This document shows positions 1-26,671 of a DNA stretch of 64,000 bases, piece after piece (within the stretch, counting starts at the first letter, position 1; each line of letters opens with the position of its first letter). The notes under the pieces are model-generated. The model was not told where the DNA came from. It worked only from the letters and a program-made list of their open reading frames with translations, and searched no databases. Origin of the DNA: Dendrobates tinctorius (lineage: Eukaryota). Where the stretch lies: contig NW_027361882.1 in NCBI RefSeq assembly GCF_039654945.1, positions 1,736,001 through 1,800,000 of the forward strand. The letters run 5' to 3'. The translations under genes were made by a program, and so were the position numbers.

Positions 1-708
<708 letters not shown>

Positions 709-1039
709 TAGGAGTGTATTTATGGCACTGTCCTTCACTATTATTTGGGTAAACAGAAAGCAAAAACACAAATATCTTGAAATAAAAAGTAAAAAAAATA
801 AACTGCAAATAATGCATAAAGGTAATAATAAGGGTATTTAGTAAACATAATTTTAATCAAAATAATGTACAAACCATCCCGCCACGTCACGGCAACCCTT
901 GTGGGACAGTCCCTACTCTAGTATTTAAAACCTTTTCACTTGCCAAGTGACATGAATGTGAACAAGGATCGAGCGGCTGAACCACTAGTAAAAGTTTAGG
1001 CCAGACAGGATGGTTTTCCCAGCTCAGAAAGAGGGCGGT

Positions 1040-1944: not shown

Positions 1945-4900
1945 GTGCCCCCTATGTCTATATGTACAAGATATACGTTGACTACTGTAATACTGCTCCT
2001 ACGTACAAGAATATAACTACTATAATACTGCTCCTATGTACAAGAATATAACTACTATAATACTGCTCCTATGTACCGGAATATAACTACTATAATACTG
2101 CCCCTATATACAAGAATGTAACTACTATAATACTGCCCCTATGTACAAGACTATAACTACTATAATACTGCTCCTATGTACAAGAATATAACTACTATAA
2201 TACTGCCCCCTATGTACAAGAATATAACTACTATAATACTGCTCCTATGTACAAGAATATAACTACTATAATACTGCCCCCTATGTACAAGAATGTAACT
2301 ACTATAATACTGCCCCCTATGTACAATAATATAACTACTATAATACTGCCCCCTATGTACATGAATATAACTACTATAATACTGTTCCTATGTATAAGAA
2401 TATAACTACTATAATGCTGCTCGTATGTTCAAGAATATAACTACTATAATACTGCTCCTATGTACAAGAATATAACTCCTATAATACTGCCCCCTATGTA
2501 CAATAATATAACTACTATAATACTGCCCCTATGTTCAAGAATATAACTCCTATAATACTGCCCCCTATGTACAAGAATATAACTACTATAATACTGCTCC
2601 TATGTACAAGAATATAACTACTATAATACTGCTCCTATGCACAAGAATATAACTACTATAATACTGCTCCTATGTATAAGAATATAACTACTATAATACT
2701 GCTTCTATGTACAATAATATAGCTACTATAATACTGCCCTATGTACAAGAATATAACTACTATAATACTGCTTCTATGTACAAGAATATAACTACTATAA
2801 TATAGCCCCCTATGTACAAGAATATAACTACTGTAATACCGCTCCTATGTACAAGAATATATTTACTATAATACTGCTTCTGTGTACAAGAATATACCTA
2901 CTATAATACTGCCCCTATGTTCAAGAATATAACTCCTATAATACTGCCCCCTATGTACAAGAATATAACTACTATAATACTGCCCCTATGTACAAGAATA
3001 TAACTACTATAATACTGCCCCTATGTTCAAGAATATAACTACTATAATACTGCTCCCTATGTACAAGAATATAACTACTATAATACTGCTCCTATGTACA
3101 AGAATATAACTACTATAATACTGCTTCTATGTACAAGAATATAGCTACTATAATACTGCCCTGTGTACAAGAATATAACTACTATAATACCGCTCCTATG
3201 TACAAGAATATATCTACTATAATACTGCTTCTGTGTACAAGAATATACCTACTATAATACTGCTCCTATGTTCAAGAATATAACTCCTATAATACTGCCC
3301 CTATGTACAAGAATATAACTACTATAATACTGCTCCTATGTACAAGAATATAACTACTATAATATTGCTCCTATGCACAAGAATATAACTACTATAATAC
3401 TGCTCCCTATGTACAAGAATATAACTACTATAATACTGCTCCTATGTACAAGAATATAACTACTATAATACTGCTTCTATGTACAATAATATAGCTACTA
3501 TAATACTGCCCTATGTACAAGAATATAACTACTATAATACAGCCCCCTATGTACAAGAATATAACTACTGTAATACCGCTCCTATGTACAAGAATATATC
3601 TACTATAATACTGCTTCTGTGTACAAGAATATACCTACTATAATACTGCCCCCTATATACAATAATATAACTACAATAATACTGCCCCTATGTACAAGAA
3701 TATAACTCCTATAATACTGCCCCCTATGTACAAGAATATAACTACTATAATACTGCTCCTATGTACAAGAATATAACTACTATAATACTGCTCGTATGTT
3801 CAAGAATATAACTACTATAATACTGCTCCTATGTACAAGAATATAACTACTATAATACTGCCCCCTATGTACAATAATATAACTACTATAATACTGCTCC
3901 TATGTACAAGAATATAACTACTATAATACTGCTTCTATGTACAAGAATATAGCTACTATAATACTGCCCTATGTACAAGAATATAACTACTATAATACTG
4001 CTTCTATGTACAATAATATAGCTACTATAATACTGCCCTATGTACAAGAATATAACTACTATAATACAGCCCCCTATGTACAAGAATATAACTACTGTAA
4101 TACCGCTCCTATGTACAAGAATATATCTACTATAATACTGCTTCTGTGTACAAGAATATACCTACTATAATATTGCCCCCTATATACAATAATATAACTA
4201 CTATAATACTGCCACTATGTACAAGAATATAACTACTATAATACTGCCCCTATGTACAAGAATATAACTCCTATAATACTGCCCCCTATGTACAAGAATA
4301 TAACTACTATAATAATGCTCCTATGTACAAGAATATAACTACTATAATACTGCTCGTATGTTCAAGAATATAACTACTATAATACTGCTCCTATGTACAA
4401 GAATATAACTACTATAATACTGCCCCCTATGTACAATAATATAACTACTATAATACTGCCACTATGTACAAGAATATAACTACTATAATACTGCCCCTAT
4501 GTTCAAGAATATAACTACTATAATAATGCTCCTATGTACAAGAATATAACTACTATAATACTGCTTCTATGTACAAGAATATAACTACTATAATACTGCC
4601 CCTATGTACAAGAATATAACTACTGTAATACCGCTCCTATGTACAAGAATATATCTACTATAATACTGCCCCTATGTACAAGAATATAACTACTGTAATA
4701 CCGCTCCTATGTACAATAATATACCTACTATAATACTGCCCCCTATATACAATAATATAACTACAATAATACTGCCCCTATGTACAAGAATATAACTACT
4801 ATAATACTGCCCCTACGTACAAGAATATAACTACTATAATACTGCCCCTATGTACAAGAATATAACGACTATAATACTGCTCACTATGTACAAGAATATA

Positions 4901-7003
4901 ACTACTATAATACTGCTTCTCTGTACAAGAATATAACTACTATAATACTGCTCCTATGTACAAGAATATAACTACTATAGTACTGCCCCCTATGTACAAT
5001 AATATATCTAGTATAATACTGCCCCTATGTTCAAGAATATAACTCCTATAATACTACCCCTATGTACAATAACATATCTACTATAATACTGCCCCTATAT
5101 ACAAGAATATAACTACTATAATACTGCCCCCTATGTACAAGAATATAACTACTATAATACTGCTCCCTATGTACAAGAATATAACTACTGTAATACTGCT
5201 CCTATGTACAAGAATATAACTACTATAATACTGCCCCTATGTACAAGAACATAACTACTATAATACTGCCCCTATGTACAAGAATATAACTACTATAATA
5301 CTGCCCCTATGTACAAGAATATAACTACTATAATACTGCCTCCTATGTACAAGAATATAACTACTATAATACTGCCCCTATGTACAAGAATATAACTACT
5401 ATAATACTGCCTCCTATGTACAAGAATATAACTACTATAATACTGCCCCCTATGTACAAGAATATAACTACTATAATACTGCTCCCTATGTACAAGAATA
5501 TAACTGCTATAATACTGCTCCTATGTACAAGAATATAACTACTATAATACTGCTTCTATGTACAAGAATATAGCTACTATAATACTGCCCTATGTACAAG
5601 AATATAACTACTATAATACTGCTTCTATGTACAAGAATATAACTACTATAATACTGCCCCTATGTACAAGAATATAACTACTGTAATACCGCTCCTATGT
5701 ACAAGAATATATCTACTATAATATTGCCCCTATGTACAAGAATATAACTACTGTAATACCGCTCCTATGTACAAGAATATGCCTACTATAATACTGCTCC
5801 TATGTACAAGAATATAACTACTATAATACTGCCCCTATATACAATAATATAACTACAATAATACTGCCCCTATATACAAGAATATAACTACTATAATACT
5901 GCCCCTATGTACAAGAATATAACTACTATAATACTGCCCCTATGTACAAGAATATAACGACTATAATACTGCTCACTATGTACAAGAATATAACTACTAT
6001 AATACTGCTTCTCTGTACAAGAATATAACTACTATAATACTGCTCCTATGTACAAGAATATAACTACTATAATACTGCCCCTATGTACAATAATATATCT
6101 ACTATAATACTGCCCCTATGTTCAAGAATATAACTCCTATAATACTGCCCCCTATGTACAATAACATATCTGCTATAATACTGCCCCTATATACAAGAAT
6201 ATAACTACTATAATACTGCCCCCTATGTACAAGAATATAACTACTATAATACTGCCCTTATATACAAGAATATAGCTACTATAATACTGCTCCCTATGTA
6301 CAAGAATATAACTACTATAATACTGCCCCTATGTACAAGAACATAACTACTATAATACTGCCCCTATGTACAAGAATATAACTACTATAATACTGCCTCT
6401 TATGTACAAGAATATAACTACTATAATACTGCTCCCTATGTACAAGAATATAACTACTATAATACTGCCCCTATGTACAAGAACATAACTACTATAATAC
6501 TACCCCTATGTACAAGAATATAACTACTATAATACTGCCCCTATGTACAAGAACATAACTACTATAATACTGCCCCTATGTACAAGAATATAACTACTAT
6601 AATACTGCCTCTTATGTACAAGAATATAACTACTATAATACTGCTCCCTATGTACAAGAATATAACTACTACAATACTGCCCCTATGTACAAGAATATAA
6701 CTACTATAATACTGCTCCCTATGTACAAGAATATAACTACTATAATACTGCCCTTATATACAAGAATATAGCTACTATAATACTGCTCCCTATGTACAAG
6801 AATATAACTACTATAATACTGCCCCTATGTACAAGAACATAACTACTATAATACTGCCCCTATATACAATAATATAACTACAATAATACTGCCCCTATAT
6901 ACAAGAATATAACTACTATAATACTGCCCCTATGTACAAGAATATAACTACTATAATACTGCCCCTATGTACAAGAATATAACTACTATAATACTGCCTC
7001 CTA
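1945..7003. repeat. 35-bp AT-rich satellite, array 1 (~140 units)
   Basis: Unit TATGTACAAGAATATAACTACTATAATACTGC(C/T)CC with 34-36 bp variants; first units degenerate. Confidence 0.97.
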
Positions 7004-10000
7004 GCTGTGAGGTTGTGTGTTTGTAGCTCTCCTGATGTCTGGAGCAAGCCCAGGGGGAGGCCACCCTGGGCGGGGTAACTCCCCAAGCAAGGCCCAGGCT
7101 TCCAGGCCTACACTTGGAAGTAACGCTCAAGTTGTGTCTAAGGCGGATGCAAGTCCCAAAGTTGTTTCTGATGGAAAGAAAGCTCAGAATGGAAGTAGCA
7201 GCAGCAGCAGCAAGAAAGATGAAGCTGTGAAAGTGCAAAAAGTAACGGAACAAGGAAAAGCCATGGCTGTGGGTAAGAAAGTTCCAGTTAAGCAGTCGGC
7301 CAGCCAAGGCAAGCAGAGTGAAGGACAACTAGGAGAAATCCAGAAGAAATCTACTGGTGAGAAGCTGAATGGAGGAAAGCAGCCTGCAGCTCAGGAGGTG
7401 CCATCACCATCTTCAGGTGTGCAGCTGACTCCCAGCAGACAGAGGAGAACCTCACTGGAGAGACAGACGCTCCAGGAGAACCTGCAGCAGAAGCATGTGG
7501 TGGCCAGCATGGCGAGCTCTGGGCGCACAAGGTCGCAGTCAGGTGGCAGCAGTAAAAGTGCTGTGGAGCCTGGAGCCACGAAACCAGCGGTGGTGAAAGT
7601 TAAGGAGACGTCTGGTTTCAAGCATCCAGGGACATTGCTGAAAGCAGGATCCCAGGAGGAGACGCCACGTGCACCTGAGCTTCAGGTCGCAGAGGAGATC
7701 CCAGGACTGGTCAAGAGGCTCGGTGAGTTACAGCAGCACAAAGACTTGCTGCAGAAGCAAATAGAAATGGGCTATAATGTAAAGGCTGCTAATCCTGGTG
7801 GAGATCACACCTTTTGTGATCAGACTCTGAACATGCTTGGTATACAGCTGGCAAAAGTGGTGACGGACATGGACTGTGTCCTAGAGAAGATGGGGCCCCT
7901 GGCAGAGACTTATAGGAACCAGGAACTGTTTATGTCACACAAGCAGGACTCTGCAGGTTCCAGCTCAGACATTGTCCCAGGTGAGCCCCAGAAGCCGGTG
8001 CGGCCAGTGCTGCAGCCTGCAAGTTTCTGCTTCCAAAAGGGTCAAATGCTGCAGCCGCAGCAGCCTGCGGCAGACCCCAAGCAGCAGCATGTTATGCAGA
8101 TTCCAGCAGGTGTACCACAAGTCTCAGAATGCCCAGCACAGCAGCCTGCAGAAGATTCCAAGCAGCAGCATGGACTGCACTTTCCAGCAGAGGGACTACA
8201 AGTCTCAGAATGCCAAGCACAACAGTTGGGCAGTGGACATGTGCCGGTCATTACTGATGGTGCCCAGCAGGGCTCTGATGCTGGGGATAACCGCGCTGTA
8301 TCTGGGGGGCTGGGGGCTTGGGGGAGCACAGTATCTTTGGTGGACGCTGCACAGTCTGATAATGACATTGATGTTGATGATAACAATGTGCATGATAATG
8401 TCTGTGATTTCCCCCCTTTAATTTCAAGCACACAAGGTGTGGCTGCCCCTCCTGCTGCAGATCTTCACCCCGTCAGTCAACCCAATGTGACCCCGCACGG
8501 TCCCCCCAGTAATGCCTGGAGTCGTGGTGCTCCGTCCTTTACCTCTGGTACCAACTATACAGGCCAGGCGTTTAAACTGAGAAACGTTGTGCGTTTCCGG
8601 CACAGAGGTGCCAAGGAGGACCTGCCAGACAGGAGGTTTGTCATCAGGGAGCTCTTGTGCCACCAGATGGGGTTTGTGCCAGTCAGCATCCTGGCAGTGA
8701 TTAATCTTCCAGACAGGCAGGGCTATGATGTCAGCTTTAAGCTCATGTCTGACCTGGACAGATTCTGGTCTAGTTTCCCCAAGTTTAGAGACACGGAGGG
8801 CTGGAGTAAGTTCAGCTTTATTCCTATCTCTAAGCCAGATACTGTCACTGTAAGTGTCATCTTCTGGAATGAGTCTGTTCCCCCGCAGGACATTGTGGTG
8901 TGGCTCCGGAGGCATTGTGACCTGGTCTCTGACCTCACCAAAAGCAGAGACAGTGATGGGATCTGGACGGGAGGGTGGCGGGTTTTGGTGAAGCTGCGCC
9001 AGTGCAATAACATCACTGCCCATTTACCCAACTCCTTCTTTATTGGGAGGGAGAGGGGTGTGTGTTTCTATCCTGGGCAGCCTCGTAAGTGCTTTAAATG
9101 TGGCAAGGCAGGTCACCTGGCAAATACCTGTACTGTGGTGAAGTGCAGCCTGTGTGGGGAGGTCGGCCATCTAGCTGCAGACTGCCAGAACATCAGGTGC
9201 AACCTCTGTGGGAAGATCGGTCACCCTCACAGGGACTGTCCAGACGCCTGGCACAATATCTGTAAGGACTTTCCTGACGAGGACTTGGTGGCAGGGGCAG
9301 AGATTCTGGAGGAGGCAGCTTTACTGTCAGGGGAAATACTGACCAGACCAGAGGTCCACCAGGGGTCTACTCAGCTAACACCAGAGCAGCAGGGTTCAGA
9401 GAGAGAACAGGGGAGTATGGAGGTTGTACCTCAGGGGCAGCGGTCACAGGAAGGCATTACTTCAGTGCTGCCATCTGTGTCTGACGAGTATAGCAATAAT
9501 CAGAAAAGGAAGAAAAAGGACAAGGCCTCCCGTTAACCTGAGGGGTATGACACTGGCCAAGGAGCCGGGAAGAAATTCCAGAGCTCTGCAGGTGTAATGG
9601 TCGTATCTAACAGGTTTGATGTTCTGTCTGAGTCTGACGGCGATTTTGAAGATGACCTTAAAAGAATTGACGCAGAGTGTGATAGGGACGTAGAGGACTG
9701 TCCTCCGCCAAAGCGGAAGCCCTTACCTGAGGGCACTCGGGTAGAGTCTGAGATGGAGACCGGTGGTGAACAGAATAACTCCGACTCAGATCTGTGACGC
9801 CGTCAACCAGATAATGTCCAAACTCAGATAGGGAAAATCATTAGGAGAAATTAGGAAATGTTAAGATAGAGAAGGATGAGTCACTGGGTAGGAACATGAT
9901 GAGCTCTGTTTGCAAAGTGTTTTTTTTTTTTTTTTTTCTCTCCTCAAACTACGAGTATGGACTCTAAGTTAATTTGATATGTATAAACTGGATATGTAAT

Positions 10001-10084
10001 GAATGTATGTACAATCCTAGTGAATTCAGTTTTGTATTATTGGAGGAATGTTATTTGGATTTGTTTGGTTTTTACAATAAAAAT
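7004..10084 (+). mobile_element. ORF1-only L1/Tx1-like non-LTR retroelement inserted in the 35-bp satellite
   Basis: Unique sequence bounded on both sides by satellite. About 31-nt 5' UTR, one long gag-like ORF, ~290-nt T-rich 3' region with AATAAA at 10076-10081. Imperfect duplicated target TGCCTCCTA (6995-7003) / TGCCCCTA (10085-10092). No EN/RT ORF. Confidence 0.8.
7035..9536 (+). CDS. ORF1p/ZCCHC3-like zinc-knuckle RNA-binding protein (833 aa from ATG 7035; frame continues to 9797 after one TAA)
   Basis: K/S/Q-rich N-terminus, predicted coiled coil (EEIPGLVKRLGELQQ...), RRM-like segment (NVVRFRH...GYDVSFK...VWLRRHCD...GIWTGGWRVLVKL...HLPNSFFIGRERGVCFYPGQPRKC). Three CX2CX4HX4C knuckles (CFKCGKAGHLANTC, CSLCGEVGHLAADC, CNLCGKIGHPHRDC) and a basic KRKKKDK tract. 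Confidence 0.88.
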   Translation: MSGASPGGGHPGRGNSPSKAQASRPTLGSNAQVVSKADASPKVVSDGKKAQNGSSSSSSKKDEAVKVQKVTEQGKAMAVGKKVPVKQSASQGKQSEGQLGEIQKKSTGEKLNGGKQPAAQEVPSPSSGVQLTPSRQRRTSLERQTLQENLQQKHVVASMASSGRTRSQSGGSSKSAVEPGATKPAVVKVKETSGFKHPGTLLKAGSQEETPRAPELQVAEEIPGLVKRLGELQQHKDLLQKQIEMGYNVKAANPGGDHTFCDQTLNMLGIQLAKVVTDMDCVLEKMGPLAETYRNQELFMSHKQDSAGSSSDIVPGEPQKPVRPVLQPASFCFQKGQMLQPQQPAADPKQQHVMQIPAGVPQVSECPAQQPAEDSKQQHGLHFPAEGLQVSECQAQQLGSGHVPVITDGAQQGSDAGDNRAVSGGLGAWGSTVSLVDAAQSDNDIDVDDNNVHDNVCDFPPLISSTQGVAAPPAADLHPVSQPNVTPHGPPSNAWSRGAPSFTSGTNYTGQAFKLRNVVRFRHRGAKEDLPDRRFVIRELLCHQMGFVPVSILAVINLPDRQGYDVSFKLMSDLDRFWSSFPKFRDTEGWSKFSFIPISKPDTVTVSVIFWNESVPPQDIVVWLRRHCDLVSDLTKSRDSDGIWTGGWRVLVKLRQCNNITAHLPNSFFIGRERGVCFYPGQPRKCFKCGKAGHLANTCTVVKCSLCGEVGHLAADCQNIRCNLCGKIGHPHRDCPDAWHNICKDFPDEDLVAGAEILEEAALLSGEILTRPEVHQGSTQLTPEQQGSEREQGSMEVVPQGQRSQEGITSVLPSVSDEYSNNQKRKKKDKASR

Positions 10085-10808
10085 TGCCCCTATATACAAG
10101 AATATAACTACTGTAATACTGCCCCTATGTACAAGAATATAACTACTATAATACTGCCCCTATGTACAAGAATATAACTACTATAATACTGCCCCTATGT
10201 ACAAGAATATAACTACTATAATACTGCCTCCTATGTACAAGAATATAACTACTATAATACTGCTCCCTATGTACAAGAATATAACTACTATAATACTGCC
10301 CCTATGTACAAGAATATAACTACTATAATACTGCCCCTATGTACAAGAATATAACTACTATAATACTGCCCCTATGTACAAGAATATAACTACTATAATA
10401 CTGCTCCTATGTACAAGAATATAACTACTATAATACTGCTCCTATGTACAAGAATATAACTACTATAATACTGCTCCTATGTACAAGAATATAACTACTA
10501 TAATACTGCCCCTATGTACAAGAATATAACTACTATAATACTGCTCCTATGTACAAGAATATAACTACTACAATACTGCCCCTATGTACAAGAATATAAC
10601 TACTATAATACTGCCCCCTATGTACAAGAATATAACTACTATAATACTGCTCCTATGTACAAGAATATAACTACTATAATACTGCCCCCTATGTACAATA
10701 ATATAACTACTATAATACTGCCCCTATGTACAAGAATATAACTACTATAATACTGCTCCTATGTATAAGGATATAACTACTATAATACTGCTTCTATGTA
10801 CAAGAATA
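10085..10808. repeat. 35-bp satellite, array 2 (~20 units), continuation after the insertion
   Basis: Same unit and orientation as array 1. Confidence 0.97.
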
Positions 10809-12517
10809 GAACGACCTACAATAAGGCTCTGTCCTGACTCTCATGCTTTGTAACTTCCTCATGTGTAGATGTGTAATGTTTTTACCATTTATCGATGATG
10901 AGTTTCTGCCCTGTTATGCCCGTCTTTGCTTCTTCTACCTCTGACCACCAGCGCCTTCTCCTGGATCCTGCTACCCACCATCCTTCCTCCTATTAACAGT
11001 ATTTCACGTGTCTTCCGCTTTCTCCTTTCCTTTATGACTTTGATACCAGTTTCTTGCCTTTGCTCTGTCATCGCTGGCCTTGGATTGCTTCCGCGTTCCT
11101 TCATGCCTGTAGCAGATCCCGCTTCTGTATACATCGAGTGTGACTATTTCCAGAGGACTTTCAGTAACCTCACTGATAATGTCATTGTGGAGTCGTCTCC
11201 CTTACCAAACACATTAGGATCACTTCCAATGCCCATGAGAGGAATTTTCTCACTCTCCTTTGTCTTTCATTGGAGCAGCACGAAACTAGCGTGCCAATCA
11301 GGCGACATAAAATTAAAGGCACCGAATTATCACCCAGAGAGGTGTCCCCATTATGTCTTAACACATTAGATGCAACCACATTAACTAAAGTACTCTGCAA
11401 TTACTCAACCTTTAACAGCACCAAAAATCACCTCCAGAAATTCATCACTATTCCCTCTGGATTTAATTTCTATTACTATTCTGGAAATATTTCCTGTCAG
11501 AATGTGCCCTCCATACGCCACGCAAGGGCACATCACTGCTGAAAAAATATCAATAAATCACCTAAAAAAGAGAATCACATCAAAGTCAAACAGCAAAATG
11601 CCCAAAACTCGGTGAATTAATGGTCGCCTGTGTGAGTTAGGGGTAAGGTTTACCATGTATGGTGCCAAGAACATCTCAGATGTTTGACACCTGGAGGTGA
11701 TACCATGGTGGGTGCCGGGTCTCATCTCATCAAGACAAAGGTAGTTTATTTCTGGAAAAGCTGCGCTCAAGATTGAATTTTCCTAAGGAGAAATGGAGAT
11801 CAAATTTTATTAGGAATCTTCCCAGGATTATGAGATGCAACAAGAGTGGGAAAGTCAGTGGATATTGCTCCACACACGTTCATAGAGGTCATCATGGATA
11901 TCACAAATGGTTTGGATGTAAGAGCTGCCTTCAATATCCTTCCAGTTTGTGCAGGTCAATGACGGGTGCTGTGTGGCCCATCAGCGATAGGAAGCCCATT
12001 TATATCCATTACCCGGGGTGAGCACTGTGGGTGATGGAAGCCAGGAGTCGAAGTGGGTTTGGTAAAAACTGTGAGCAAAATCGGTGGAAACTCGAGAAGA
12101 GCAAAAGACAGACCTAGGCTTTATGTTCTGTGTTCTTCTTGCTTCTGATGGTGATCGTGGTAGAACGGATCCACATTACTGGTTTGTTGGGTTCCAGTCT
12201 TAGAAATCTTGGCCAACATTGCCTCAATATAAAGGGATTGTCTCATCAGATATGAACTCTCTTGAAATGAAGTAATCAGTGTGAATGGGTGACTACTTTG
12301 GATTTTGCTCTTGGGCTCCCTTTCGAAGGGCTGGTTTTGAAGGTAAATCATGTATTTTGTCCTGCAACATCTTCCTAAAATTGGAGTCACTTTTTCAAAG
12401 CACCACGCCGTTCTGGCTTCTAGAGGGCGGGTTCCAATAGCTCAGTTGTTCTGATTGGTCAAGAAGGCGTGAGCAGATGGAATACTGTCATAAGACCACC
12501 CTTCTTATCACAACTCA

Positions 12518-12937: not shown

Positions 12938-14350
12938 TAAGTTGTGATAAGAAGGGTGGTCTTATGATGGTATTCCATCTGCTCATGCCTTCTTGACCAA
13001 TTGGAACAACTGACCAATGGAAGAGTGTAACCCAGGGTAGGACCAGACTACTAATACAGTAGGTGTTTGTGGTCAATGTCTATAGAGACAAACACAAATC
13101 GTCAGCGTTTTAATCAACACTATTTATTTAGTAATGCACTTATTTTTGTATTTTTGGTAGGGCAAAAAAAATTTGCAAAAAGAAGTCTTACCCATTCAAT
13201 TACGGTAAATCCCCGCCATACAGGTTTTCCCATAGGAGATTATTAATGATCAGTTTTGAAATGTTAAAAAAAAAATTGAATTGCATTTTTTTTTTTAATT
13301 TTGGTCAGAAGATTCATTATTGTCAACATCCTCCTAATAATACACATGAGATGGTAGAAGAGTCACGAGGCTCCCGGTTTCTTAGCGTTGGAAAGTGACA
13401 AACCACCACAATGTGGAATCCGCAGATTTTGATACTCTATAGAGGAAGATTGTCATCCGAGGCATTTTTTGCAGTCAATTTTTTTTTGCTCATATTTACG
13501 TCGCCAGCTTAAATTTCGTTCAGTTTCATTTTTGCAATTGTGACTTGGGTTTCTTTGTGTAACTGGGAAAAGTAGAGTCATCGGTTTACACTGCCTTCTG
13601 GGAGTCAATTTGGGTCAAAACATGCAACTTTTTAGCAAGTTTCAAATCGCAAATTTGTCAAAATCACAAGCCTTTTGTTTTAGGCAACATGAAATTGCAC
13701 AAAAATTTTGTGAATTTCATGCCAGTTTCAACCAGCTCTGCCAAAGTGGGCGTTCATGAGATATTGTGGAGTACCTGAAGGCAGAAATGTTACTCCAGTC
13801 ACTGATTGGAATAACATTTCTGGAGAGCCAATTGTAAGTTGTACCTAATTTATCTAACCTACTTCATGTGTTTGAGCGACTTGCCTAGTTACTCCAACAC
13901 TTCTGTTTCAAACTATTGGGCCACAATCACAAATTCTTGGCAAGAAAGGTACAAAATACATTACATGAAAACAAGGGCACAAAATTTTAGAAATGTCGCA
14001 GGCGCTGTAAATAAAAAGTTGTACATTAGCTCAATTTGCACCAAAAAAGTGGCAGATGTGAGGATCTATGGGGGCATGTAGGACAAAAATCTAAAAGAAA
14101 AAAGTAAATGGGTAACCCATGTCAATGCTGATATGGACGGATAATCGTATTACTTAGTAATCAGTAAAGTCTTCTCGTTGCTGAGGCAACCATGAAATGT
14201 TAGTAAGATGCTGGTGTGGTTTTCTTCTGACAAATCTGTGGGAAGATCAAAGGAGCTGAGATATTGTATTGTGACTTACTAATGGTTGGAAAACTGCGAC
14301 TCCTAGCATGCCGGCAGACTCGGGTTCAAAACCAATGATTTCTGCGGTGC

Positions 14351-15300
14351 CTGGTATCCAGCTGAAAAGGAAATTTGGGAGGAGACAAGTGTCTGGTATC
14401 CAGCTAAAGAGGATATTTGGGAGGAGACTAGTGTCTGGTATCCAGCTGAAGAGGATATTTGGGAGGAGACTAGTGTCTGGTATCCAGCTAAAGAGGATAT
14501 TTGGGAGGAGACTAGTGTCTGGTATCCAGCTAAAGAGGATATTTGGGAGGAGACTAGTGTCTGGTATCCAGCTGAAGAGGATATTTGGGAGGAGACTAGT
14601 GTCTGGTATCCAGCTAAAGAGGATATTTGGGAGGAGACTAATGTCTGGTATCCAGCTGAAAAATTACATTTGGGAGGAGACTAATGTCTGGTATCCAGCT
14701 GAAAATTACATTTGGGAGGAGACTAGTGTCTGGTATCCAGCTGAAGAGGACATATGGGTGTAGTCTTCCTTTTCAGCTGGATACCAGACACTAGTCTCCT
14801 CCCAAATGTTCTTTTCAGTTGGATGCCAGACACAAGTCTCCACCCATATGTCCTTTTCAGCTGGATGCCAGACACGAATTTGGAAGGAAACTAGTGTCTG
14901 GTATCCAGCTGAAAATTACATTTGGTAGGTGACTAGTGTCTAGTGTCCAGCTGAAAAGGACACTTAGAAAGAGATGTGTGTCTGGTATCCAGCTGAAAAG
15001 AACACTTAGAAAGAGATGTGTGTCTGGTATCCAGCTGAAAAGGACACTTAGAAAGAGATGTGTGTCTGGTATCCAGCTGAAAAGGACACTTAGAAAGAGA
15101 TGTGTGTCTGGTATCCAGCTGAAAAGAACACTTAGAAAGAGATGTGTGTCTGGTATCCAGCTGAAAAGGACACTTAGAAAGAGATGTGTGTCTGGTATCC
15201 AGCTGAAAAGGACACTTAGAAAGAGATGTGTGTCTGGTATCCAGCTGAAAAGGACACTTAGAAAGAGATGTGTGTCTGGTATCCAGCTGAAAAGGACACT
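14351..15300. repeat. 42-bp minisatellite with two sub-variants and an inverted internal block
   Basis: CTGGTATCCAGCTGAAGAGGATATTTGGGAGGAGACTAGTGT repeats to ~14760, inverted units ~14766-14873, then CTGGTATCCAGCTGAAAAGGACACTTAGAAAGAGATGTGTGT repeats. Confidence 0.92.
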
Positions 15301-16214
15301 TGTGTCCACCGCTTTGCAGGTATATCAGTGACACCTTCTTAGATTTTCTTCATTGGTCAAAGTAAAGTAACTTGGGAGGCAGGAATTAATGGATTGACTG
15401 GATTCACCCCATATTGTTTGAGCAGTCTCATGATGTTCAGTTTCCGAGATGATCTCGTCCAGTCATCATGTGTCCCGTATATGTCACTTTCAGCTATCAG
15501 ATATCGCGGCTCCAGATTTCTGCCAAGCCCAGAGCAGATACAGTTTCCGCTTACGAGCGGCCCGAGTCTCACCTTTCCACTGAGTCAGCCATCCGTTAAT
15601 GGTTTTGGGATAATAGGTGGATACATCCTAAAGATTTGTCTTCGGATCGTGGCCAAACTGACTTAAGATCACATCTCCTATGTAATGAGAAGCTGTGTCC
15701 TCAGATCATCACTCACTCCTGAGACACTGATGTCCAATTTGAAGCCAGAGAAGAGCCCTTACTATTTAAAGCACTTAAGAAAATGTAGCAATTAACAGCC
15801 GGGAGTGTATACTTAGGATAATGTATTTAATAGACTGGATTACATTTCATTTTAGAAAATCTCACAGGAGACTTCATTCACAATGAATGCCCTCCACTTA
15901 CAAACATGAAGATAGAATTTGCCAATGTGGGGAACACAGTGCAATCTCCGTATAAGAAGAGAAGCTACACTGATGCCACTGGCCAGGAATGGTGTCTATT
16001 CTGTTCCCACTGATGGGTCAGGAATAAGGGCATCAAAGTGGCCATAATTTGGCATAAAGAAAGAGGAAAACAGAACCTGATGAGAAGGCTCAAAGGACAT
16101 CCCATGGAGGAGCCAAATGAGAAGACGTGTCAGACGAATCCAAGATTAAAGAGGAGAGTTATCAATAGGAGAAAGAACCGCAGAATACCCGAGGAGGACG
16201 GCTGAAATCTCATT

Positions 16215-16922
16215 TACATAGTAACATAGTTATTAAGGTTGAAGGGAGACTTTAAGTCCATCTAGTTCACCCCATATCCTATCCTAACTTGCCCTAACAT
16301 GTTGATCCAGAGGAAGGCAAAAAAACCCCATGTGGCAACAGTAAGCTTCACATTGGGGAAAAAAATTCCTTCCCGACTCCACATACGGCAATCAGACTAG
16401 CTCCCTGGATCAACGCAATATTAAGGAGACTAGTGTATATACCCTGTAATATTATACTTTTCAAGAAAGGCATCCAGTCCCTTCTTAAATTTTAGTAGGG
16501 AATCACTAATTACAACATCATATGGCAGAGAGTTCCATAGTCTCACTGCTCTTACAGTAAAGAATCCGCATCTGTGAGTATGCTTAAACCTTCTTTCCTC
16601 CAGACGTAGAGGATGCCCCCTTGTCCCCGTCACAGGTCTAAGAGTAAAAAGATCATTAGAAAGGTCTTTGTATTGTCCCCGCATATATTTATACATTGTA
16701 ATAAGATCACCCCTAAGCCTTCGATTCTCCAAACTAAATAACCCCAAGTGTAATAACCTGTCTTGGTATTGCAGACCCCCCAGTTCCCTAATAACCTTGG
16801 CCGCTCTTCTCTGCACCCGCTCCAGTTCAGCTTTGTCTTTCTTATACACTGGAGACCAGAACTGTACACAGTATTCTAAGTGTGGTCGCAGTAGTGACTT
16901 ATATAGAGGTAAAATTATGTTC
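16215..16922 (-). mobile_element. CR1 LINE, 5'-truncated 3' fragment
   Basis: Minus-strand ORF 16430-16849 with CR1 ORF2 C-terminal motifs (LERVQRRAAK, LGLFSLENRRLRGDLI, TRGHPLRL, FFTVRAVRLWNSLP). (CTATGTTA)n tail at ~16215-16229. Confidence 0.93.
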
Positions 16923-17084
16923 TATTTGATGAATTGATTTGGATATCTTTGTGCCTCAAAATGTTATATCAAAATTTGTATAGGTCAAAAGACTAAAAAA
17001 GGTTTCAGGAAGTGATAGAGTAGGTCATTTTTTTCCCATAGAGTGGAAGGAAAACTACAGAGATATTCTGAGCATGCTCTTTAG

Positions 17085-18575
17085 TTATAATGAGATAACT
17101 ATGTTGATCCTGCCCTCTAATGATAATGAGATGACTCTGCTGACCCTTCTCTCTAATGATAATGAGATGACTCTGCTGACCCTTCTCTCTAATGATAATG
17201 AGATGACTCTGCTGACCCTGCCCTCTAATGATAATGAGATGACTCTGCTGACCCTACCCTTTAATAATAATGAGATGACTCTGCTGACCCTTCTCTCTAA
17301 TGATAATGAGATAACTATGTTGATCCTGCCCTCTAATGATAATGAGATGACTCTGCTGACCCTACCCTTTAATAATAATGAGATGACTCTGCTGACCCTT
17401 CTCTCTAATGATAATGAGATGACTCTGCTGACCCTTCTCTCTAATGATAATGAGATGACTCTGCTGACCCTGCCCTCTAATGATAATGAGGTAACTCTGC
17501 TGACCCTGCTCTCTAATAATAATGAGATGACTCTGCTGACCCTGCCCTCTAATAATAATGATGACTCTGCTGCCCTACTCTCTAATGATGAGATGACTCT
17601 GCTGATCCTGCTCTCTCTAATGATAATGATATGACTCTGTTGACCCTGCCCTCTAATGATAATGAGATGACTCTGCTGACCCTGCTCTCTAATGATAATG
17701 CGATGACTCTGCTGACCCTGCCCTCTAATGATAATGCGATGACCCTGTTGACCCTGCCCTCTAATAGTAATGAGATGATTCTTCTGACTCTGCCTTCTAC
17801 TGATGATGAGATGACACTGTTGATCCTGCCCTCTAATGATGATATCACATTGCCGACCCTGCCCTCTAATGATGGTGAGATGACTCTTCTGACCCTGCCT
17901 TCTAATAATATAACTCCTCTGGTCCTGCCTTCTAATAATAATGAGATTACTCTGCTGACCCTGCCCTCTAATGATAATGCAATGACCCTGTTGACCCTGC
18001 CCTCTAATAGTAATGAGATGATTCTTCTGACTCTGCCTTCTAATGATGATGAGATGACACTGTTGATCCTGCCCTCTAATGATGATATCACATTGCCGAC
18101 CCTGCCCTCTAATGATAATGAGATAACTCTTCTGATCCTGCCTTATAATAATCAGCTGACTATACTGACCCTGCCCTCTAATAGTGAGATGACTCTGCTG
18201 ACGCTGCTCTTTAATGATAGTGAGATGACTCTGCTTACCCTGCCCTCTAATGATAATGAGATGACTCTTCTGATCCTGCCTTATAATAATCAGCTGACTA
18301 TACTGACCCTGCCCTCTAATAATGAGATGACTCTGCTGACGCTGCTCTTTAATGATAGTGAGATGACTCTGCTTACCCTGCCCTCTAATGATAATGAGAT
18401 GACTCTTCTGATCCTGCCTTATAATAATGTGACTATTCTGGTCCTGCCCTCTAATAATAATGAGATGACTCTGCTGACCCTGCCCTCTAATAATAATGAG
18501 ATGACTCTTCTGACCCTGCCCTCTATTAATAATGAGATGACTCTTCTGACCCTGCCTTCTAATGATGAGACGACT
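17085..18575. repeat. 36-bp minisatellite (~42 units)
   Basis: Unit CTCTAATGATAATGAGATGACTCTGCTGACCCTGCC. Confidence 0.95.
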
Positions 18576-20107
18576 CTACCCAACTGCACCAAAAATATTC
18601 TTAATTAGTTTATTGTAAGCAATGATGGCACGCTACATTGATGAACCTCCATGTAACTAATAACTGAGGATGAGAAAACATGGCGTCCCTTGAACCCAAC
18701 ATAACCCGCAATCTGATTCTCATGAGTTTCTCTCCACCTACAAAGAGAAAATTCTAAATAACTTGTTTCTAAAAAAGAGTGGTATGATATAGGTGTGCGC
18801 CGGTGTTTGACTTTCTAGTCGCTCTCGGAGGAAACATTAGGAGAACATTGAGCTTGCTGCATAGAACAAGCTGAGAGGGATGTAGATGGTCCCACCGCAG
18901 CCGTTTGTATCTCCAGAGCTGTTAGAAATCTGTCTCTCCTCTCCAGCCTCAGGGGCTCCATTCTTTCCAACATTTGACTTTTTTTTTTTTTTCCTAAAGA
19001 TAAACATAATGATAAAGTGAAATGACCCATAAAAGTGCATGCGTCCGATGCACCAAAAGGCCAAATATTGTGCATTCCGGGGGCTGTCATTGATCTGACG
19101 GCTGATGGATCTGAAGCCGTCCTGCACGCACTATTCTCTACAGATGATTCATCACGGGAAGACACTTGAGACACGGTGATGGATAAGGCCCATAACATCC
19201 CGTATGTCCTGTATTTAACATGTAAAAAAAAAAACGATCACTATTGATGAATTGAAGCCATTTGTCGGAATATTCTTGTGTGTCCACAAGCCGATATTAC
19301 GAGATTTCCTCCAGGTGTTTTTCTTCTACTTAGTCGAGAGCCAAGGTCAACCACGCTGATGAAGCCAGTCCGTGCCCCTCCGGTGGGCGCCCCACCACTT
19401 CATTTTCGCCCAATATGGGGAGTCAGTCATCTGCAAACAACAAGAACCCAACACAGGAACACAAACAAAAAAGAGATCTGAGCTCTGGTAATTGGAAGTC
19501 AACCAGGCATGATTAACATTTATGTGAGCGCCGCGGCCCGATACCTTCTAACTGCTTACAAAACACAATAGCTTTCAAGAGGAGGTAGTTATGAGGCTAA
19601 TTAAGGCGACGCGTTGTGAAAATGATATTACGCCAGGCTGTGTATTCCATGGAACGTATTCAAGGAAACAGGTCGGCCTGTCATGCTATCTTAAGAACAA
19701 GGACACGGACTTGTGCTCCCGAAAATGCGGGATAATGTGACATAGACTGATACAAATATAGGGGGCTCATGTGCTATAGACACAAAGAAATGGGGCCCCG
19801 GAGGCTAAATCACCTCCTCTCCAGTGGGTAAAGAGCTGTGCCCGGATTCTGTACAGGTTGTACCAATATAGGGGTGGAGAATTCAAATGTACCTCTTGTT
19901 TCAGAATAAGCTGTCTGTGCATAAGGAATAACACTATCATATGACTTGTATACTGTGTTTTTCACCAGTTTTCCCCTCTGCAGGCTTTGTTTTTAATTTT
20001 CAATTGTCTCTGAGCTGGTGCGTAGAAAGAGCACGCACAGACATAAGGGATTCCTGCTCCCCTGTCTTTATGTAGCACATGTTCAGAAGACGCAGCAGCA
20101 TGGAGGT

Positions 20108-20540
20108 AGTGCAGCTGTGATTCCAGTAGTGGAGTAAGGAGTACTGAATAATTTTGCTGTGAATCCAGCAGTGTAGTAATGAGTACGGAGCAGTGTAGCT
20201 TTGAATCCAGCACTGTAATAATGAGTACTGAAGTGTAGCTGTGAATCCAGCACTGTAGTGATGACTACTTAACAATCTAGCTGTGAATCCAGCAGTGTAA
20301 TAATGAGTACTTAAGTGTAGCTGTTAATCAATCAGTGTAGAGAGGAGTACTCAACAGTGTAGCTGTGAACCAACAGTGTAGTGATGAGTACTTAATTTGG
20401 ATGTGAATCCAGCAGTGTAATAATGAGTACTGAATTGTAGCTGTTAATCCATTGGTGTAGAGAGGAGTTCTCAAAAGTGTAGCTGTGAATCAACAGTGTA
20501 GTGATGAGTACTTAGCAGTGTAGCTGTGAATCCAGCACTG
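20108..20540. repeat. Degenerate ~40-42-bp minisatellite (~10 units)
   Basis: Recurring GTGTAGCTGTGAATCCAGCAGTGTAGTGATGAGTACT. Confidence 0.85.
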
Positions 20541-24997: not shown

Positions 24998-26671
24998 GTA
25001 ATACTGCCCCCTATGTACACGAATATAACTACTATAATACTGCCCCCTATGTACAAGAATATAACTACTATAATACTGCCCCTATGTATAAGAATATAAC
25101 TTCTATAATACTGCCCCTATGTACAAGAATATAACTACTATAATACTGCCCCTATGTACAAGAATATAAATACTATAATACTGCCCAATATGTACAAGAA
25201 TATCACTACTATAATACTGCCCCTATGTACAAGAATATAACTACTATAATACTGTCCCTATGTACAAGAATATAACTACTATAATACTGCTCCTATGTAC
25301 AAGAATATAACTACTATAATACTGCCCCTATGTACAAGAATATAAATACTATAATACTGCTCCTATGTACAAGAATATAACTACTATAATACTGCTCTTT
25401 ATGTACAAGAATATAACTACTATAATACTGCCCCTATGTACAAGAATATAACTACTATAATACTGACCCTATGTACAAGAATATAACTACAATAATACGG
25501 CCCCTATGTACAAGAATATAAATACTATAATACTGCTCCTATGTACAAGAATATAACTACTATAATACTGCTCTTTATGTACAAGAATATAACTACTATA
25601 ATACTGCCCCTATGTACAAGAATATAACTACTATAATACTGACCCTATGTACAAGAATATAACTACTATAATACTGCCCCTATGTACAAGAATATAAATA
25701 CTATAATACTGCTCCTATGTACAAGAATATAACTACTATAATACTGCTCTTTATGTACAAGAATATAACTACTATAATACTGCCCCTATGTACAAGAATA
25801 TAACTACAATAATACTGCCCCTATGTACAAGAATATAACTACAATAATACTGCCCCTATGTACAAGAATATAACTACTATAATTCTGCCCCTATGTACAA
25901 GAATATAACTACTATAATACTGCCCCTATGTATAAGAATATAACTACTATAATACTGCCCCCTATGTACAAGAATATAACTACTATAATACTGCCCCTAT
26001 GTACAAGAATATAACTACTATAATACTGCCCCTATGTACAAGAATATAACTACTATAATACTGCCCCTATGTACAAGAATATAACTACTATAATACTGCC
26101 CCTATGTACAAGAATATAACTACTATAATACTGCTCCTATGTGCAAGAATATAAATACTATAATACTGCTCCTATGTACAAGAATATAACTACTATAATA
26201 CTGCCCCTATGTACAAGAATATAACTACTATAATACTGCCCCTATGTACAAGAATATAACTACTATAATACTGCCCCTATGTACAAGAATATAACTACTA
26301 TAATACTGCCCCTATGTACAAGAATATAACTACTATAATACTGCTCCTATGTACAAGAATATAACTACTATAATACTGCCCCTATGTACAAGAATATAAC
26401 TACTATAATACTGCCCCTATGTACAAGAATATAACTACTATAATACTGCCCCTATGTACAAGAATATAACTACTATAATACTGCTCCTATGTGCAAGAAT
26501 ATAAATACTATAATACTGCTCCTATCTACAAGAATATAACTACTATAATACTGCCCCTATCTACAAGAATATAACTACTATAATACTGTTCCTATGTACA
26601 ATAATATACTGTAACTACTATAATACTGCCCCTATGTGCAAGAATATAACTACTATAGTACTGCCTCTATA
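24998..26671. repeat. 35-bp satellite, array 3 (~48 units)
   Basis: Same unit and strand as arrays 1 and 2. Confidence 0.97.

What the first reader, a model, noticed from the sequence alone, without database searches (positions are those of the whole stretch)
7004..10084. ORF1-only Tx1/L1-like retroelement embedded in a 35-bp satellite
Seen: a 3.08-kb unique insert splits a satellite array. It has a ~31-nt leader, a ~920-codon frame for a coiled-coil + RRM-like + triple CCHC protein, and a short T-rich 3' region ending AATAAAAAT directly into satellite. There is no APE endonuclease or RT. Known: Tx1-clade LINEs have zinc-knuckle ORF1s related to ZCCHC3 and are often sequence-specific for repeats, and ORF1-only derivatives (HAL1) exist for L1. 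Inference: this is a non-autonomous 'half-Tx1' family that supplies its own ORF1p, borrows ORF2p in trans and lives in this satellite. That would be a three-part system of satellite niche, autonomous helper and ORF1-only passenger. An annotation pipeline would probably mislabel it as a nested ZCCHC3-like gene.
Basis: partly seen in the sequence, partly recalled or inferred. Interest (0 to 1): 0.88.

Follow-up and report, generated by a model that had tools for sequence, protein, structure and literature searches.

The report
ORF1-only LINE living in frog satellite
This 3.1-kb insert in a poison-frog satellite is a copy of a jumping gene that kept its RNA-binding gene but lost its reverse transcriptase, so it must borrow that enzyme from full-length relatives that insert at exactly the same spot of the same 35-base repeat; frogs evolved such "half elements" at least twice.

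Summary
The insert 7004-10084 splits a 35-bp satellite, but its frame carries a TAA at 9534-9536. This copy therefore encodes 833 aa, not about 920.

In Dendrobates tinctorius a second copy at another locus (98.8% identical, intact 920 aa) lies 1.5 kb from a 6.4-kb full-length LINE. That LINE has ORF1 plus APE-RT ORF2, the same 5' and 3' ends and the same satellite junctions. The short element equals the full LINE minus about 3.26 kb of ORF2.

The same deletion form occurs in Ranitomeya and Phyllobates. ORF1 there is under purifying selection (dN/dS 0.2-0.3 overall, 0.06-0.14 in the RNA-binding core).

Anomaloglossus has a second ORF1-only family with different breakpoints. It sits on three chromosomes, also in the satellite.

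Full-length relatives in Hyla, Rhinoderma, Leptodactylus and Phyllobates use the same satellite site.

Not shown: transcription, an intact helper in D. tinctorius, or formal Tx1-clade membership.

It is a vertebrate, satellite-specific analogue of HAL1 and Drosophila HeT-A, and a new variant of a known kind. The scan noted further copies of this element on other DNA of this genome (s1-376937, s1-377012).

The parts
1981..7003 (+). Upstream 35-bp satellite array (about 143 units); the target array into which the element is inserted
   Evidence: TRF, period 35, 91% matches; 147 pattern matches in the window against 0 expected
6995..7003 (+). 9-nt 'leader' TGCCTCCTA at the 5' junction. It is a rare satellite variant that accompanies the element in every complete copy, so it is either carried in the element RNA or is the 5' copy of the target
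   Evidence: Present at all complete 5' junctions in Dendrobates, Phyllobates, Hyla, Leptodactylus and (1 mismatch) Rhinoderma. The variant is only 15 of 1,013 satellite units. Anomaloglossus copies carry TGCCCCCAA instead.
7004..7034 (+). 31-nt 5' UTR (GCTGTGAGGTTGTG...)
   Evidence: Identical in the sibling copy and 85% identical to the full-length LINE 5' end
7004..7124 (+). 5'-terminal block conserved at nucleotide level (5' UTR plus codons 1-30); candidate cis element such as an internal promoter or a 5' integration signal
   Evidence: Third-codon-position identity is 0.86 in codons 1-30, against 0.40-0.69 in all but one of the other 30-codon windows, among six diverged elements. Other subfamilies in read contigs share 7004-7118 and then diverge (loose ends at 7118).
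7035..9536 (+). ORF1 as it stands in this copy: 833 codons plus TAA
   Evidence: the ORF listing and translate; Pfam ZCCHC3 RBD1, RBD2 and zf-CCHC
7674..7934 (+). Two long helices (aa 214-300), a probable coiled coil or oligomerisation region
   Evidence: AlphaFold H214-252 and H259-300, pLDDT 73-87, the only confident part of the whole-protein model; conserved block in alignment A1
8058..8225 (+). 81-bp internal tandem duplication (2.1 copies) inside the ORF1 linker, present only in the D. tinctorius copies
   Evidence: TRF; absent from the Phyllobates, Hyla and Rhinoderma proteins in A1
8580..9071 (+). Tandem RRM-like RNA-binding domains (RBD_ZCCHC3_1st aa 516-593, RBD_ZCCHC3_2nd aa 608-679)
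   Evidence: Pfam; AlphaFold and Foldseek matches to tandem-RRM proteins; dN/dS 0.06-0.14
9084..9242 (+). Three CCHC zinc knuckles (aa 684-736)
   Evidence: Pfam zf-CCHC; PDB sequence hits to retroviral nucleocapsid knuckles; invariant Cys/His columns
9534..9536 (+). Premature in-frame TAA (Lys in the sibling copy and in all homologues). It cuts off the conserved 86-aa C-terminal tail, so this copy is probably decaying
9537..9797 (+). Rest of the ancestral ORF1 frame (86 codons, conserved tail with the VMVVSNRF.VLSESDGD motif) plus the original TGA
   Evidence: Alignment A1; tail dN/dS 0.2-0.3 among ORF1-only copies
9798..9860 (+). Deletion scar. Directly after the ORF1 stop the sequence resumes in the last part of the ancestral ORF2 coding region; about 3.26 kb of ORF2 (APE, RT, zinc knuckle) is missing
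   Evidence: Alignment A2 with the full-length LINE 3' end; BLAST of the element against the full copy
9798..10084 (+). 3' region (287 nt), homologous to the 3' end of full-length elements
10060..10084 (+). Conserved 3'-terminal block TTTGTTTGGTTTTTACAATAAAAAT, shared by ORF1-only and full-length elements of all six genera; probable site where reverse transcription starts. It contains AATAAA and has no poly(A) tail
   Evidence: Alignment A4 of ten elements; junction table; other subfamilies in read contigs converge on 10063-10084 (loose ends at 10062)
10085..10812 (+). Downstream satellite array, resuming at TGCCCCTAT..., the same register in all twelve 3' junctions seen

Best explanation
Window 7004-10084 is one copy of a non-autonomous, ORF1-only derivative of a target-specific LINE of the L1/Tx1 group, and this copy is slightly decayed. 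That LINE inserts at one fixed position of a 35-bp satellite in hyloid frogs. Shown: the element has the 5' end (31-nt UTR), the whole ORF1 and the last 287 nt of the full-length LINE. An internal deletion of about 3.26 kb removed ORF2 from the base after the ORF1 stop codon to shortly before the ORF2 stop codon. Shown: this deletion form exists at several unrelated loci and in three dendrobatid genera, its ORF1 is under purifying selection, and a second deletion form arose independently in Anomaloglossus. Inferred mechanism: the element is transcribed, perhaps starting within the last satellite unit, so that the rare 9-nt leader TGCCTCCTA travels with it. Its ORF1 protein is long disordered N-terminus, helical region, two RRM-like domains, three CCHC knuckles and an acidic tail, and it coats its own RNA in cis. 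ORF2p from a full-length relative then recognises the shared 25-nt 3' terminus. The ORF2p endonuclease nicks the satellite between ...ATAATAC and TGCC..., and reverse transcription starts exactly at ...AATAAAAAT without a poly(A) tail. The satellite-like leader lets the cDNA end join the target seamlessly. The satellite is thus the niche, the full-length LINE the helper and the ORF1-only element a parasite of the helper.
For: Structure: a full-length 6,363-bp LINE (L002:14557-20919) shares the 5' end (85% over 115 nt), ORF1 (70% at nucleotide level, up to the stop codon) and the 3' end. It carries APE+RT ORF2 in between. The intact Hyla ORF2 has Exo_endo_phos, RVT_1 and zf-RVT domains. Site specificity: the 5' junctions of 11 complete copies and 12 3' junctions in six genera are in one register. 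In Hyla two elements sit head to tail, separated only by TGCCTCCTA. A family, not a one-off: the window and L002 copies are 98.8% identical, while their satellite flanks are 92-95% identical, within the satellite background of 87-89% +/- 6-9, and their outer flanks are unrelated. In a DNA-like run 564 short contigs lie on the element. The unitig bridging the ORF1-stop/3' junction has depth 881, like the ORF1 unitigs at 987-1122, whereas minor variants have depth 5-11. The same deletion occurs in Phyllobates (L003, 81-83% identity over the full length) and Ranitomeya (L007, 83-88% over the two aligned stretches). Selection: dN/dS among ORF1-only copies is 0.20-0.30 overall and 0.06-0.14 in RBD+CCHC, the same as among full-length elements (0.25-0.28 overall; 0.07-0.08 in the core). 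Independent origin: three Anomaloglossus copies on three chromosomes are 96-97% alike. They keep about 55 nt of the ORF2 start and join it to the last 152 nt. The ORF1 tree needs two ORF2 losses. Clade A is (Phyllobates,(Ranitomeya,(Dendrobates x2))) with support 100/99, and the Anomaloglossus clade is sister to the D. tinctorius full-length copy with support 100/100.
Against: No run could be shown to be RNA, so transcription and transcript ends are untested. The only full-length copy seen in D. tinctorius is decayed by frameshifts and stops, and is only 70% identical in ORF1. No intact helper was found in this species; intact two-ORF copies were seen only in Hyla and Leptodactylus. This window copy has a premature stop. 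A classical target-site duplication is not clear: the 5' 9-mer and the 3' flank differ in every copy. Spread by recombination between satellite arrays, rather than by retrotransposition, is not formally excluded. The depth-based copy number is rough, and the tool warns against reading depth as copy number. No conserved RNA structure was found in the shared 3' end.
Confidence: 0.8

Rival explanations
1. It is a host gene family: a ZCCHC3-like gene domesticated from LINE ORF1. It would be kept by selection for a host function such as RNA binding or retroelement restriction, and multiplied by recombination within and between satellite arrays rather than by retrotransposition.
For: ORF1 is under purifying selection over long times. 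The ORF1-only clade A follows the species tree. RefSeq annotates the sibling copy as a protein-coding gene. The same genome holds other ORF1-derived mini-genes (scan notes). Human ZCCHC3 is a LINE-1 restrictor (PMC10351740).
Against: The copies keep both LINE termini and sit exactly at the LINE insertion site in the satellite. They are multi-copy, with many variants and dead copies such as this one. Anomaloglossus has 18 proteins at 90% identity or more on at least 8 chromosomes. No synteny was found between the Phyllobates locus and either D. tinctorius locus. Synonymous divergence between genera (dS 0.24-0.37) seems to me (no calibration was run) too high for orthologous host genes of closely related genera.
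Confidence: 0.1
2. It is a dead relic: a single internal deletion in one LINE copy, later copied passively with its satellite by unequal crossing-over or segmental duplication. No mobility, and no function of ORF1.
For: Satellites expand by unequal exchange. The two D. tinctorius copies have identical junctions. This copy has a stop codon. No RNA evidence exists.
Against: Flanking satellite units are clearly less alike (92-95%) than the elements (98.8%), and the outer flanks are unrelated. The deletion form persists with an open 884-920-aa ORF and dN/dS of 0.06 in the RNA-binding core across genera at dS up to 0.37. A second form with other breakpoints lies on three chromosomes in Anomaloglossus.
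Confidence: 0.07
3. It is a processed retrocopy of a host ZCCHC3-like mRNA that landed in the satellite by chance.
For: The unit is intronless, with a short leader and an AATAAA near the 3' end.
Against: There is no poly(A) tail, and the element ends 3 nt after AATAAA. Both ends are those of a full-length LINE. The insertion point is identical in every copy and genus.
Confidence: 0.01

Closest known systems
HAL1 (half-L1) of mammals
   Same: A non-autonomous LINE derivative that encodes only ORF1p. HAL1s arose several times independently (PMC5753468). Here too ORF1 is retained and ORF2 deleted, with at least two independent origins.
   Different: HAL1 derives from mammalian L1, which has a Transposase_22-type ORF1p and poly(A) tails, and inserts without sequence specificity. 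The frog element has an ORF1p with two RRM-like domains and CCHC knuckles (ZCCHC3-type), has no poly(A) tail, and inserts at one position of a 35-bp satellite.
HeT-A and other ORF1-only telomeric Jockey-clade elements of Drosophila
   Same: These are niche-specialised LINEs living in head-to-tail arrays. ORF2 was lost repeatedly in many lineages, the ORF1-only elements depend on ORF2p of related elements, and ORF1-only lineages can persist and diversify (PMC13534243).
   Different: They belong to a different clade (Jockey), their target is chromosome ends rather than an internal satellite, and they serve the host by maintaining telomeres. No host benefit is known for the frog element.
Target-specific Tx1-clade LINEs (Tx1L, Keno, Kibi, Koshi, Tx1-Mar; some with satellite targets)
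   Same: These are APE-type LINEs with target preference for repeats, including satellites. Tandem insertions sandwich a short target copy, and dependent non-autonomous elements share the target (PMC4494074).
   Different: In the one source read for this (PMC4494074), the dependent elements are SINEs (SINEU), not ORF1-coding derivatives. Clade membership of the frog LINE was not established here.
R2 SIDEs (short internally deleted elements)
   Same: Non-autonomous elements made by internal deletion of a site-specific LINE. They keep both ends and use the parent's protein in trans (PMC3414825, title and abstract seen).
   Different: SIDEs encode no protein. The frog elements keep a selected 900-aa ORF1.
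Vertebrate host gene ZCCHC3
   Same: Same Pfam domain set: RBD_ZCCHC3_1st, RBD_ZCCHC3_2nd and CCHC knuckles.
   Different: ZCCHC3 is a host gene (about 400 aa in human; from memory). The frog element is multi-copy, more than twice as long, bounded by LINE termini and embedded in a satellite.

Membership tests
Non-LTR retrotransposon (LINE), L1/Tx1 group | Full-length members encode ORF2 with an APE endonuclease and a reverse transcriptase | tested here: met
   Hyla ORF2 (1,132 aa, intact) matches Exo_endo_phos, RVT_1 and zf-RVT. Leptodactylus ORF2 is 1,135 aa and intact. Nearest proteins are X. tropicalis RTs at 52-56% identity.
Non-LTR retrotransposon (LINE), L1/Tx1 group | ORF1 is a nucleic-acid-binding protein with RRM-like domain(s), with or without CCHC knuckles | tested here: met
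   Pfam; AlphaFold and Foldseek matches to tandem RRM proteins
Non-LTR retrotransposon (LINE), L1/Tx1 group | 5'-truncated copies and target-site duplications from target-primed reverse transcription | tested here: inconclusive
   One 3'-terminal 1.44-kb fragment ends on the satellite in the usual register, but its 5' side abuts another repeat. The 5' 9-mer and the 3' flank are similar but never identical.
Tx1 clade | The RT domain groups with reference Tx1 elements in a phylogeny | tested here: inconclusive
   No named Tx1 reference was available. The best non-frog match is a Takifugu RT (BAD04856) at 29% identity over 95% of the length, against rabbit L1 at 26% over 75%.
Tx1 clade | Sequence-specific insertion into a repeated target (common but not universal in the clade) | tested here: met
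   Same register in the 35-bp satellite in six genera
ORF1-only ('half-LINE', HAL1-like) non-autonomous retrotransposon | Keeps ORF1, lacks ORF2, and shares both termini with an autonomous element | tested here: met
   In this window copy ORF1 is cut short by a TAA; the sibling and Phyllobates copies are intact.
ORF1-only ('half-LINE', HAL1-like) non-autonomous retrotransposon | Several copies with the same deletion at independent loci | tested here: met
   Window plus L002 (unrelated flanks); Phyllobates L003 and Ranitomeya L007; three Anomaloglossus copies on three chromosomes; the junction unitig at high depth
ORF1-only ('half-LINE', HAL1-like) non-autonomous retrotransposon | Mobilised in trans by ORF2p of the autonomous partner | not testable with these tools
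   Needs a retrotransposition assay or insertion polymorphism data
HAL1 proper | Derived from mammalian L1 | tested here: not met
   The host is a frog, the ORF1 is ZCCHC3-type and there is no poly(A) tail. It is an analogue, not a member.
Host gene ZCCHC3 | Single-copy syntenic orthologue of about 400 aa | tested here: not met
   Multi-copy; 833-920 aa; LINE termini; no synteny between loci

The most novel reading that the evidence does not exclude
The LINE and the 35-bp satellite may be a co-propagating pair rather than just lodger and lodging. Under this reading, element transcripts start and end inside satellite units, which would explain why the rare 9-nt leader is inherited with the element. 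Each satellite unit would offer a TATA-like box and the target site, and retrotransposition of read-through RNAs would seed and refresh arrays. That would explain why an almost unchanged 35-bp unit accompanies the LINE in six genera of five hyloid families. ORF1-only elements would be recurrent hyperparasites of this pair, a vertebrate counterpart of the Drosophila telomeric TART/HeT-A system.
Probability: 0.2. Interest if true: 0.8.

Novelty: new variant of a known kind. Interest (0 to 1): 0.6.

Why it matters
ORF1-only LINE derivatives are known from mammalian L1 (HAL1) and from Drosophila telomeric elements. [quoted passage not shown]

This frog system is a third, independent case. It occurs in a vertebrate, in a sequence-specific LINE, and has at least two origins. 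It also leaves a clear selective signal: ORF1 stays needed after ORF2 is gone.

That makes two open questions testable in a natural system. The first is what ORF1p does that must be supplied in cis. The second is whether living in a shared tandem target favours loss of the enzyme gene.

The system also shows an unusually long association between a LINE and one satellite sequence.

On the practical side, these elements are being annotated as protein-coding genes in frog genomes (for example XP_073442725.1). That inflates 'ZCCHC3-like' gene families.

Tried and rejected
- **Retrocopy of a host mRNA:** rejected, because the ends are LINE termini, there is no poly(A) tail and the insertion register is fixed.
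- **Satellite as the element's own 3' tail:** rejected, because arrays at window 1981 and 24999 begin without any LINE 3' end, and no other LINE piece is in the window.
- **Synteny:** the Phyllobates locus shows no similarity to either D. tinctorius locus outside the satellite.
- **Conserved RNA structure in the last 120 nt:** none was predicted; only a 25-nt sequence block is conserved.
- **RNA evidence:** all runs were Logan contigs of uncertain type, so nothing can be said about expression, transcript ends or strand.
- **Whole-protein AlphaFold model:** poor (pLDDT 36) apart from helices 214-300.
- **PDB sequence search:** found only the CCHC knuckles.
- **Tx1 assignment:** no named reference was found among the hits.
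- **Ranid relative (Aquarana, L012):** it shows a similar CCTAG|CTGTGG 5' junction but in a different, non-satellite flank. The contig is too short to follow.
- **Intact ORF2 in dendrobatids:** none was seen in the loci or in the protein search.
Full report
**What is in the window.** A 35-bp satellite (consensus unit ACTACTATAATACTGCCCCTATGTACAAGAATATA) forms arrays at 1981-7003, 10085-10812 and 24999-26670. Between the first two arrays lies a unique, GC-rich 3,081-bp block at 7004-10084.
- It has a 31-nt leader and an ATG at 7035.
- The open frame runs to a TAA at 9534-9536, giving 833 codons. The same frame then continues for 86 codons to a TGA at 9795-9797.
Every other descriptive point is correct.
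- Pfam finds the two ZCCHC3-type RNA-binding domains (aa 516-593 and 608-679) and CCHC knuckles at aa 684-736.
- An AlphaFold model of aa 485-745 (pLDDT 78) shows two alpha/beta domains whose best PDB matches are tandem-RRM proteins.
- In a poor whole-protein model the only confident part is a pair of long helices at aa 214-300.
- The 287-nt 3' region holds a T18 run and ends ...ACAATAAAAAT directly on the satellite, with no poly(A) tail.

**Whose genome, and is it a single copy?** The closest protein is a 920-aa Dendrobates tinctorius protein, 98-99% identical, with Lys at the position of the stop. It is RefSeq XP_073442725.1, 'uncharacterized protein'. Scan notes also name the genome as the dyeing poison frog.
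- The locus of that protein (L001/L002) holds an element 98.8% identical to the window element over all 3,081 bp, with letter-identical junctions.
- It is a different locus. The window's right flank has no match there, and the left flank matches only in inverted orientation.
- The satellite units flanking the two copies are 92-95% identical. That is inside the background for random register-matched satellite segments (87-89% +/- 6-9) and below the 98.8% of the elements. This pattern is expected for separate insertions rather than one duplicated block.
- Contigs of 20 public runs from 9 studies hold the element.
- In a DNA-like run, 564 short unitigs lie on it, with many variant positions. The unitig that bridges the ORF1-stop/3' junction (9741-9868) has k-mer depth 881. 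ORF1 unitigs have depth 987-1122, and minor-variant unitigs 5-11.
- This points to a multi-copy family in which the ORF2-less form dominates. The tool warns that depth is not a copy number, so I give no figure.
- The scan itself noted two more copies of about 3.04-3.08 kb elsewhere in this genome (s1-376937, s1-377012). I could not read them.

**The autonomous relative.** In L002, 1.5 kb downstream of the ORF1-only copy and in the same satellite, lies a 6,363-bp element (14557-20919).
- It starts with the same GCTGTGAGGTTGTG... 5' end, 85% identical over 115 nt.
- It has a homologous but frameshifted ORF1, followed by an ORF2 with APE and RT motifs that is also decayed.
- It ends ...TATACTAAAAAT on the satellite.
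- Nucleotide homology with the window element runs from the 5' end to the ORF1 stop codon. It resumes shortly before the ORF2 stop codon and continues through the 3' UTR to the last base.
- The window element is therefore the full LINE minus about 3.26 kb of ORF2.
- A third piece in L002 (1924-3368) is the last 1.44 kb of such a LINE. It too ends on the satellite in the same register.

**Other frogs.** The same satellite and the same junctions recur across six genera.
- Full-length elements occur in Phyllobates terribilis (L006), Hyla sarda (L004, two elements head to tail, ORF2 intact at 1,132 aa), Rhinoderma darwinii (L005) and Leptodactylus fuscus (L009, both ORFs intact).
- The Hyla ORF2 carries Exo_endo_phos, RVT_1 and zf-RVT domains.
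- Its nearest relatives are Xenopus tropicalis reverse transcriptases (52-56% identity), then a Takifugu RT (29% over 95% of the length), then mammalian L1 (26% over 75%).
- This places the family in the L1/Tx1 group. I could not test Tx1 membership against named references.
- The literature reports many target-specific Tx1 families, some with satellite targets, and tandem insertions that sandwich a short target copy (PMC4494074). The two Hyla elements, separated only by TGCCTCCTA, fit that picture.

**Junction geometry.**
- All twelve 3' junctions read ...AAAAAT followed by (T/C)(G/A)CC..., one fixed register.
- Every complete 5' junction outside Anomaloglossus reads ...ATAATAC TGCCTCCTA | GCTGTGAGG, with one mismatch in Rhinoderma.
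- That 9-mer is a rare satellite variant: 15 of 1,013 units, and 0-3 per locus in dendrobatids.
- The 3' flank carries whatever variant is locally common, and it never equals the 5' 9-mer.
- The two Anomaloglossus copies with complete 5' ends carry a different 9-mer, TGCCCCCAA, in both.
- The 9-mer thus varies with the element lineage and not with the local array. I infer that it is part of the transcribed element, a target-like leader that could guide seamless joining of the cDNA end, rather than a classical target-site duplication. This is an inference.

**Other possible cis elements.**
- Among six diverged elements, third-codon-position identity is 0.86 in codons 1-30, against 0.40-0.69 in all but one of the other 30-codon windows (the sparsely filled window 361-390 reaches 0.79).
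- Read contigs of other subfamilies share 7004-7118 and then diverge. The first 120 nt or so are therefore constrained as nucleic acid, plausibly as an internal promoter or 5' integration signal.
- At the other end only a 25-nt terminal block is conserved in all elements. No conserved secondary structure was predicted there.

**Is the ORF1-only form a lineage?** The same deletion form, alignable over the full length including the scar, occurs in Phyllobates (L003, 81-83% identity, intact 884-aa ORF, satellite on both sides) and Ranitomeya imitator (L007, 83-88% over the two aligned stretches, interrupted by unrelated insertions). The Phyllobates locus shares no flank with either D. tinctorius locus.

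| Comparison | dS | dN/dS overall | dN/dS in RBD+CCHC core |
|---|---|---|---|
| Dendrobates vs Phyllobates, ORF1-only | 0.37 | 0.28-0.30 | 0.06 |
| Dendrobates vs Ranitomeya, ORF1-only | 0.24 | 0.20 | 0.14 |
| Among full-length elements | not applicable | 0.25-0.28 | 0.07-0.08 |

ORF1 has stayed under purifying selection after ORF2 was lost.

**A second origin.** Anomaloglossus baeobatrachus has ORF1-only copies on three chromosomes (L008, L010, L011).
- They are 96-97% alike and lie in the satellite with the same 3' junction.
- Their breakpoints differ from the dendrobatid form. They keep about 55 nt of the ORF2 start and join it to the last 152 nt.
- Their 90%-identity protein cluster has 18 members on at least 8 chromosomes.
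- An ORF1 tree of 13 copies needs two ORF2 losses. Clade A is (Phyllobates,(Ranitomeya,(Dendrobates x2))) with support 100/99. The Anomaloglossus clade is sister to the D. tinctorius full-length copy with support 100/100.

**Mechanism (inferred).** The ORF1-only RNA encodes its own ORF1p, which binds it in cis. ORF2p from a full-length relative recognises the shared 3' terminus and nicks the satellite at the fixed site. Reverse transcription then starts from the last base.

The following remain unshown:
- transcription;
- an intact helper in D. tinctorius;
- the nick sites;
- exclusion of spread by recombination between arrays.

The window copy itself, with its premature stop before the conserved tail, is probably a decaying daughter copy.

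**Comparison with known systems.**
- The element works like HAL1. HAL1 encodes only ORF1p and arose several times (PMC5753468).
- It works even more like the ORF1-only telomeric elements of Drosophila. There ORF2 was lost repeatedly in array-dwelling LINEs, and the ORF1-only forms depend on ORF2p of related elements (PMC13534243).
- It is a member of neither family. It differs in host, in ORF1 type, in lacking a poly(A) tail and in its internal satellite target.
- I found no description of it in the searched literature. That search does not cover Repbase or Dfam.
- I rate it a new variant of a known kind, of solid interest to transposon biologists.

Noticed in passing
L009:10087-10090; L006:9232-9235: In full-length relatives the ORF2 start codon overlaps the ORF1 stop codon (AUGA) in Leptodactylus and Phyllobates. 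In Hyla and Rhinoderma an AUG follows within a few bases of the stop. This suggests ORF2 is translated by termination-reinitiation.
   Followed up: partly
L012:1-200 (Aquarana catesbeiana): A ranid relative of ORF1 (45% identity) has a similar 5' junction (...CACCCTAG|CTGTGGTTGG...). Its upstream flank is a different, GC-rich repeat, not the 35-bp satellite, so this lineage may use another target.
   Followed up: no
window 1-712 vs L002:5117-5834: A 0.7-kb sequence beside the satellite array is 96% identical, in inverted orientation, to a sequence between two satellite arrays at the other D. tinctorius locus. It is another repeat that keeps company with this satellite.
   Followed up: no
window 14347-15301, 26855-28323, 35426-36407, 43879-48467, 50936-55422, 57140-58181: The window is crowded with other long tandem arrays. 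There are 42-bp arrays in opposite orientation, and units of 32, 86, 43 (4.6 kb), 93 (4.5 kb) and 20 bp. None is related to the element.
   Followed up: no
L007:4418-4764 and 5713-7400 (Ranitomeya imitator): The Ranitomeya ORF1-only copy is broken by two unrelated insertions, one with palindromic ends. The annotated 540-aa 'protein' is spliced around them.
   Followed up: no
L002:1733-1923: The 3' LINE fragment at L002:1924-3368 is bounded on its 5' side by a repeat rich in CCGATA/TATCGG palindromes. It may be a later insertion rather than a true 5' truncation.
   Followed up: no
window 8058-8225: An 81-bp in-frame tandem duplication (27 aa) in the ORF1 linker occurs only in the D. tinctorius ORF1-only copies. 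The full-length copy in L002 has its own 114-bp duplication at the equivalent place (15583-15814).
   Followed up: partly
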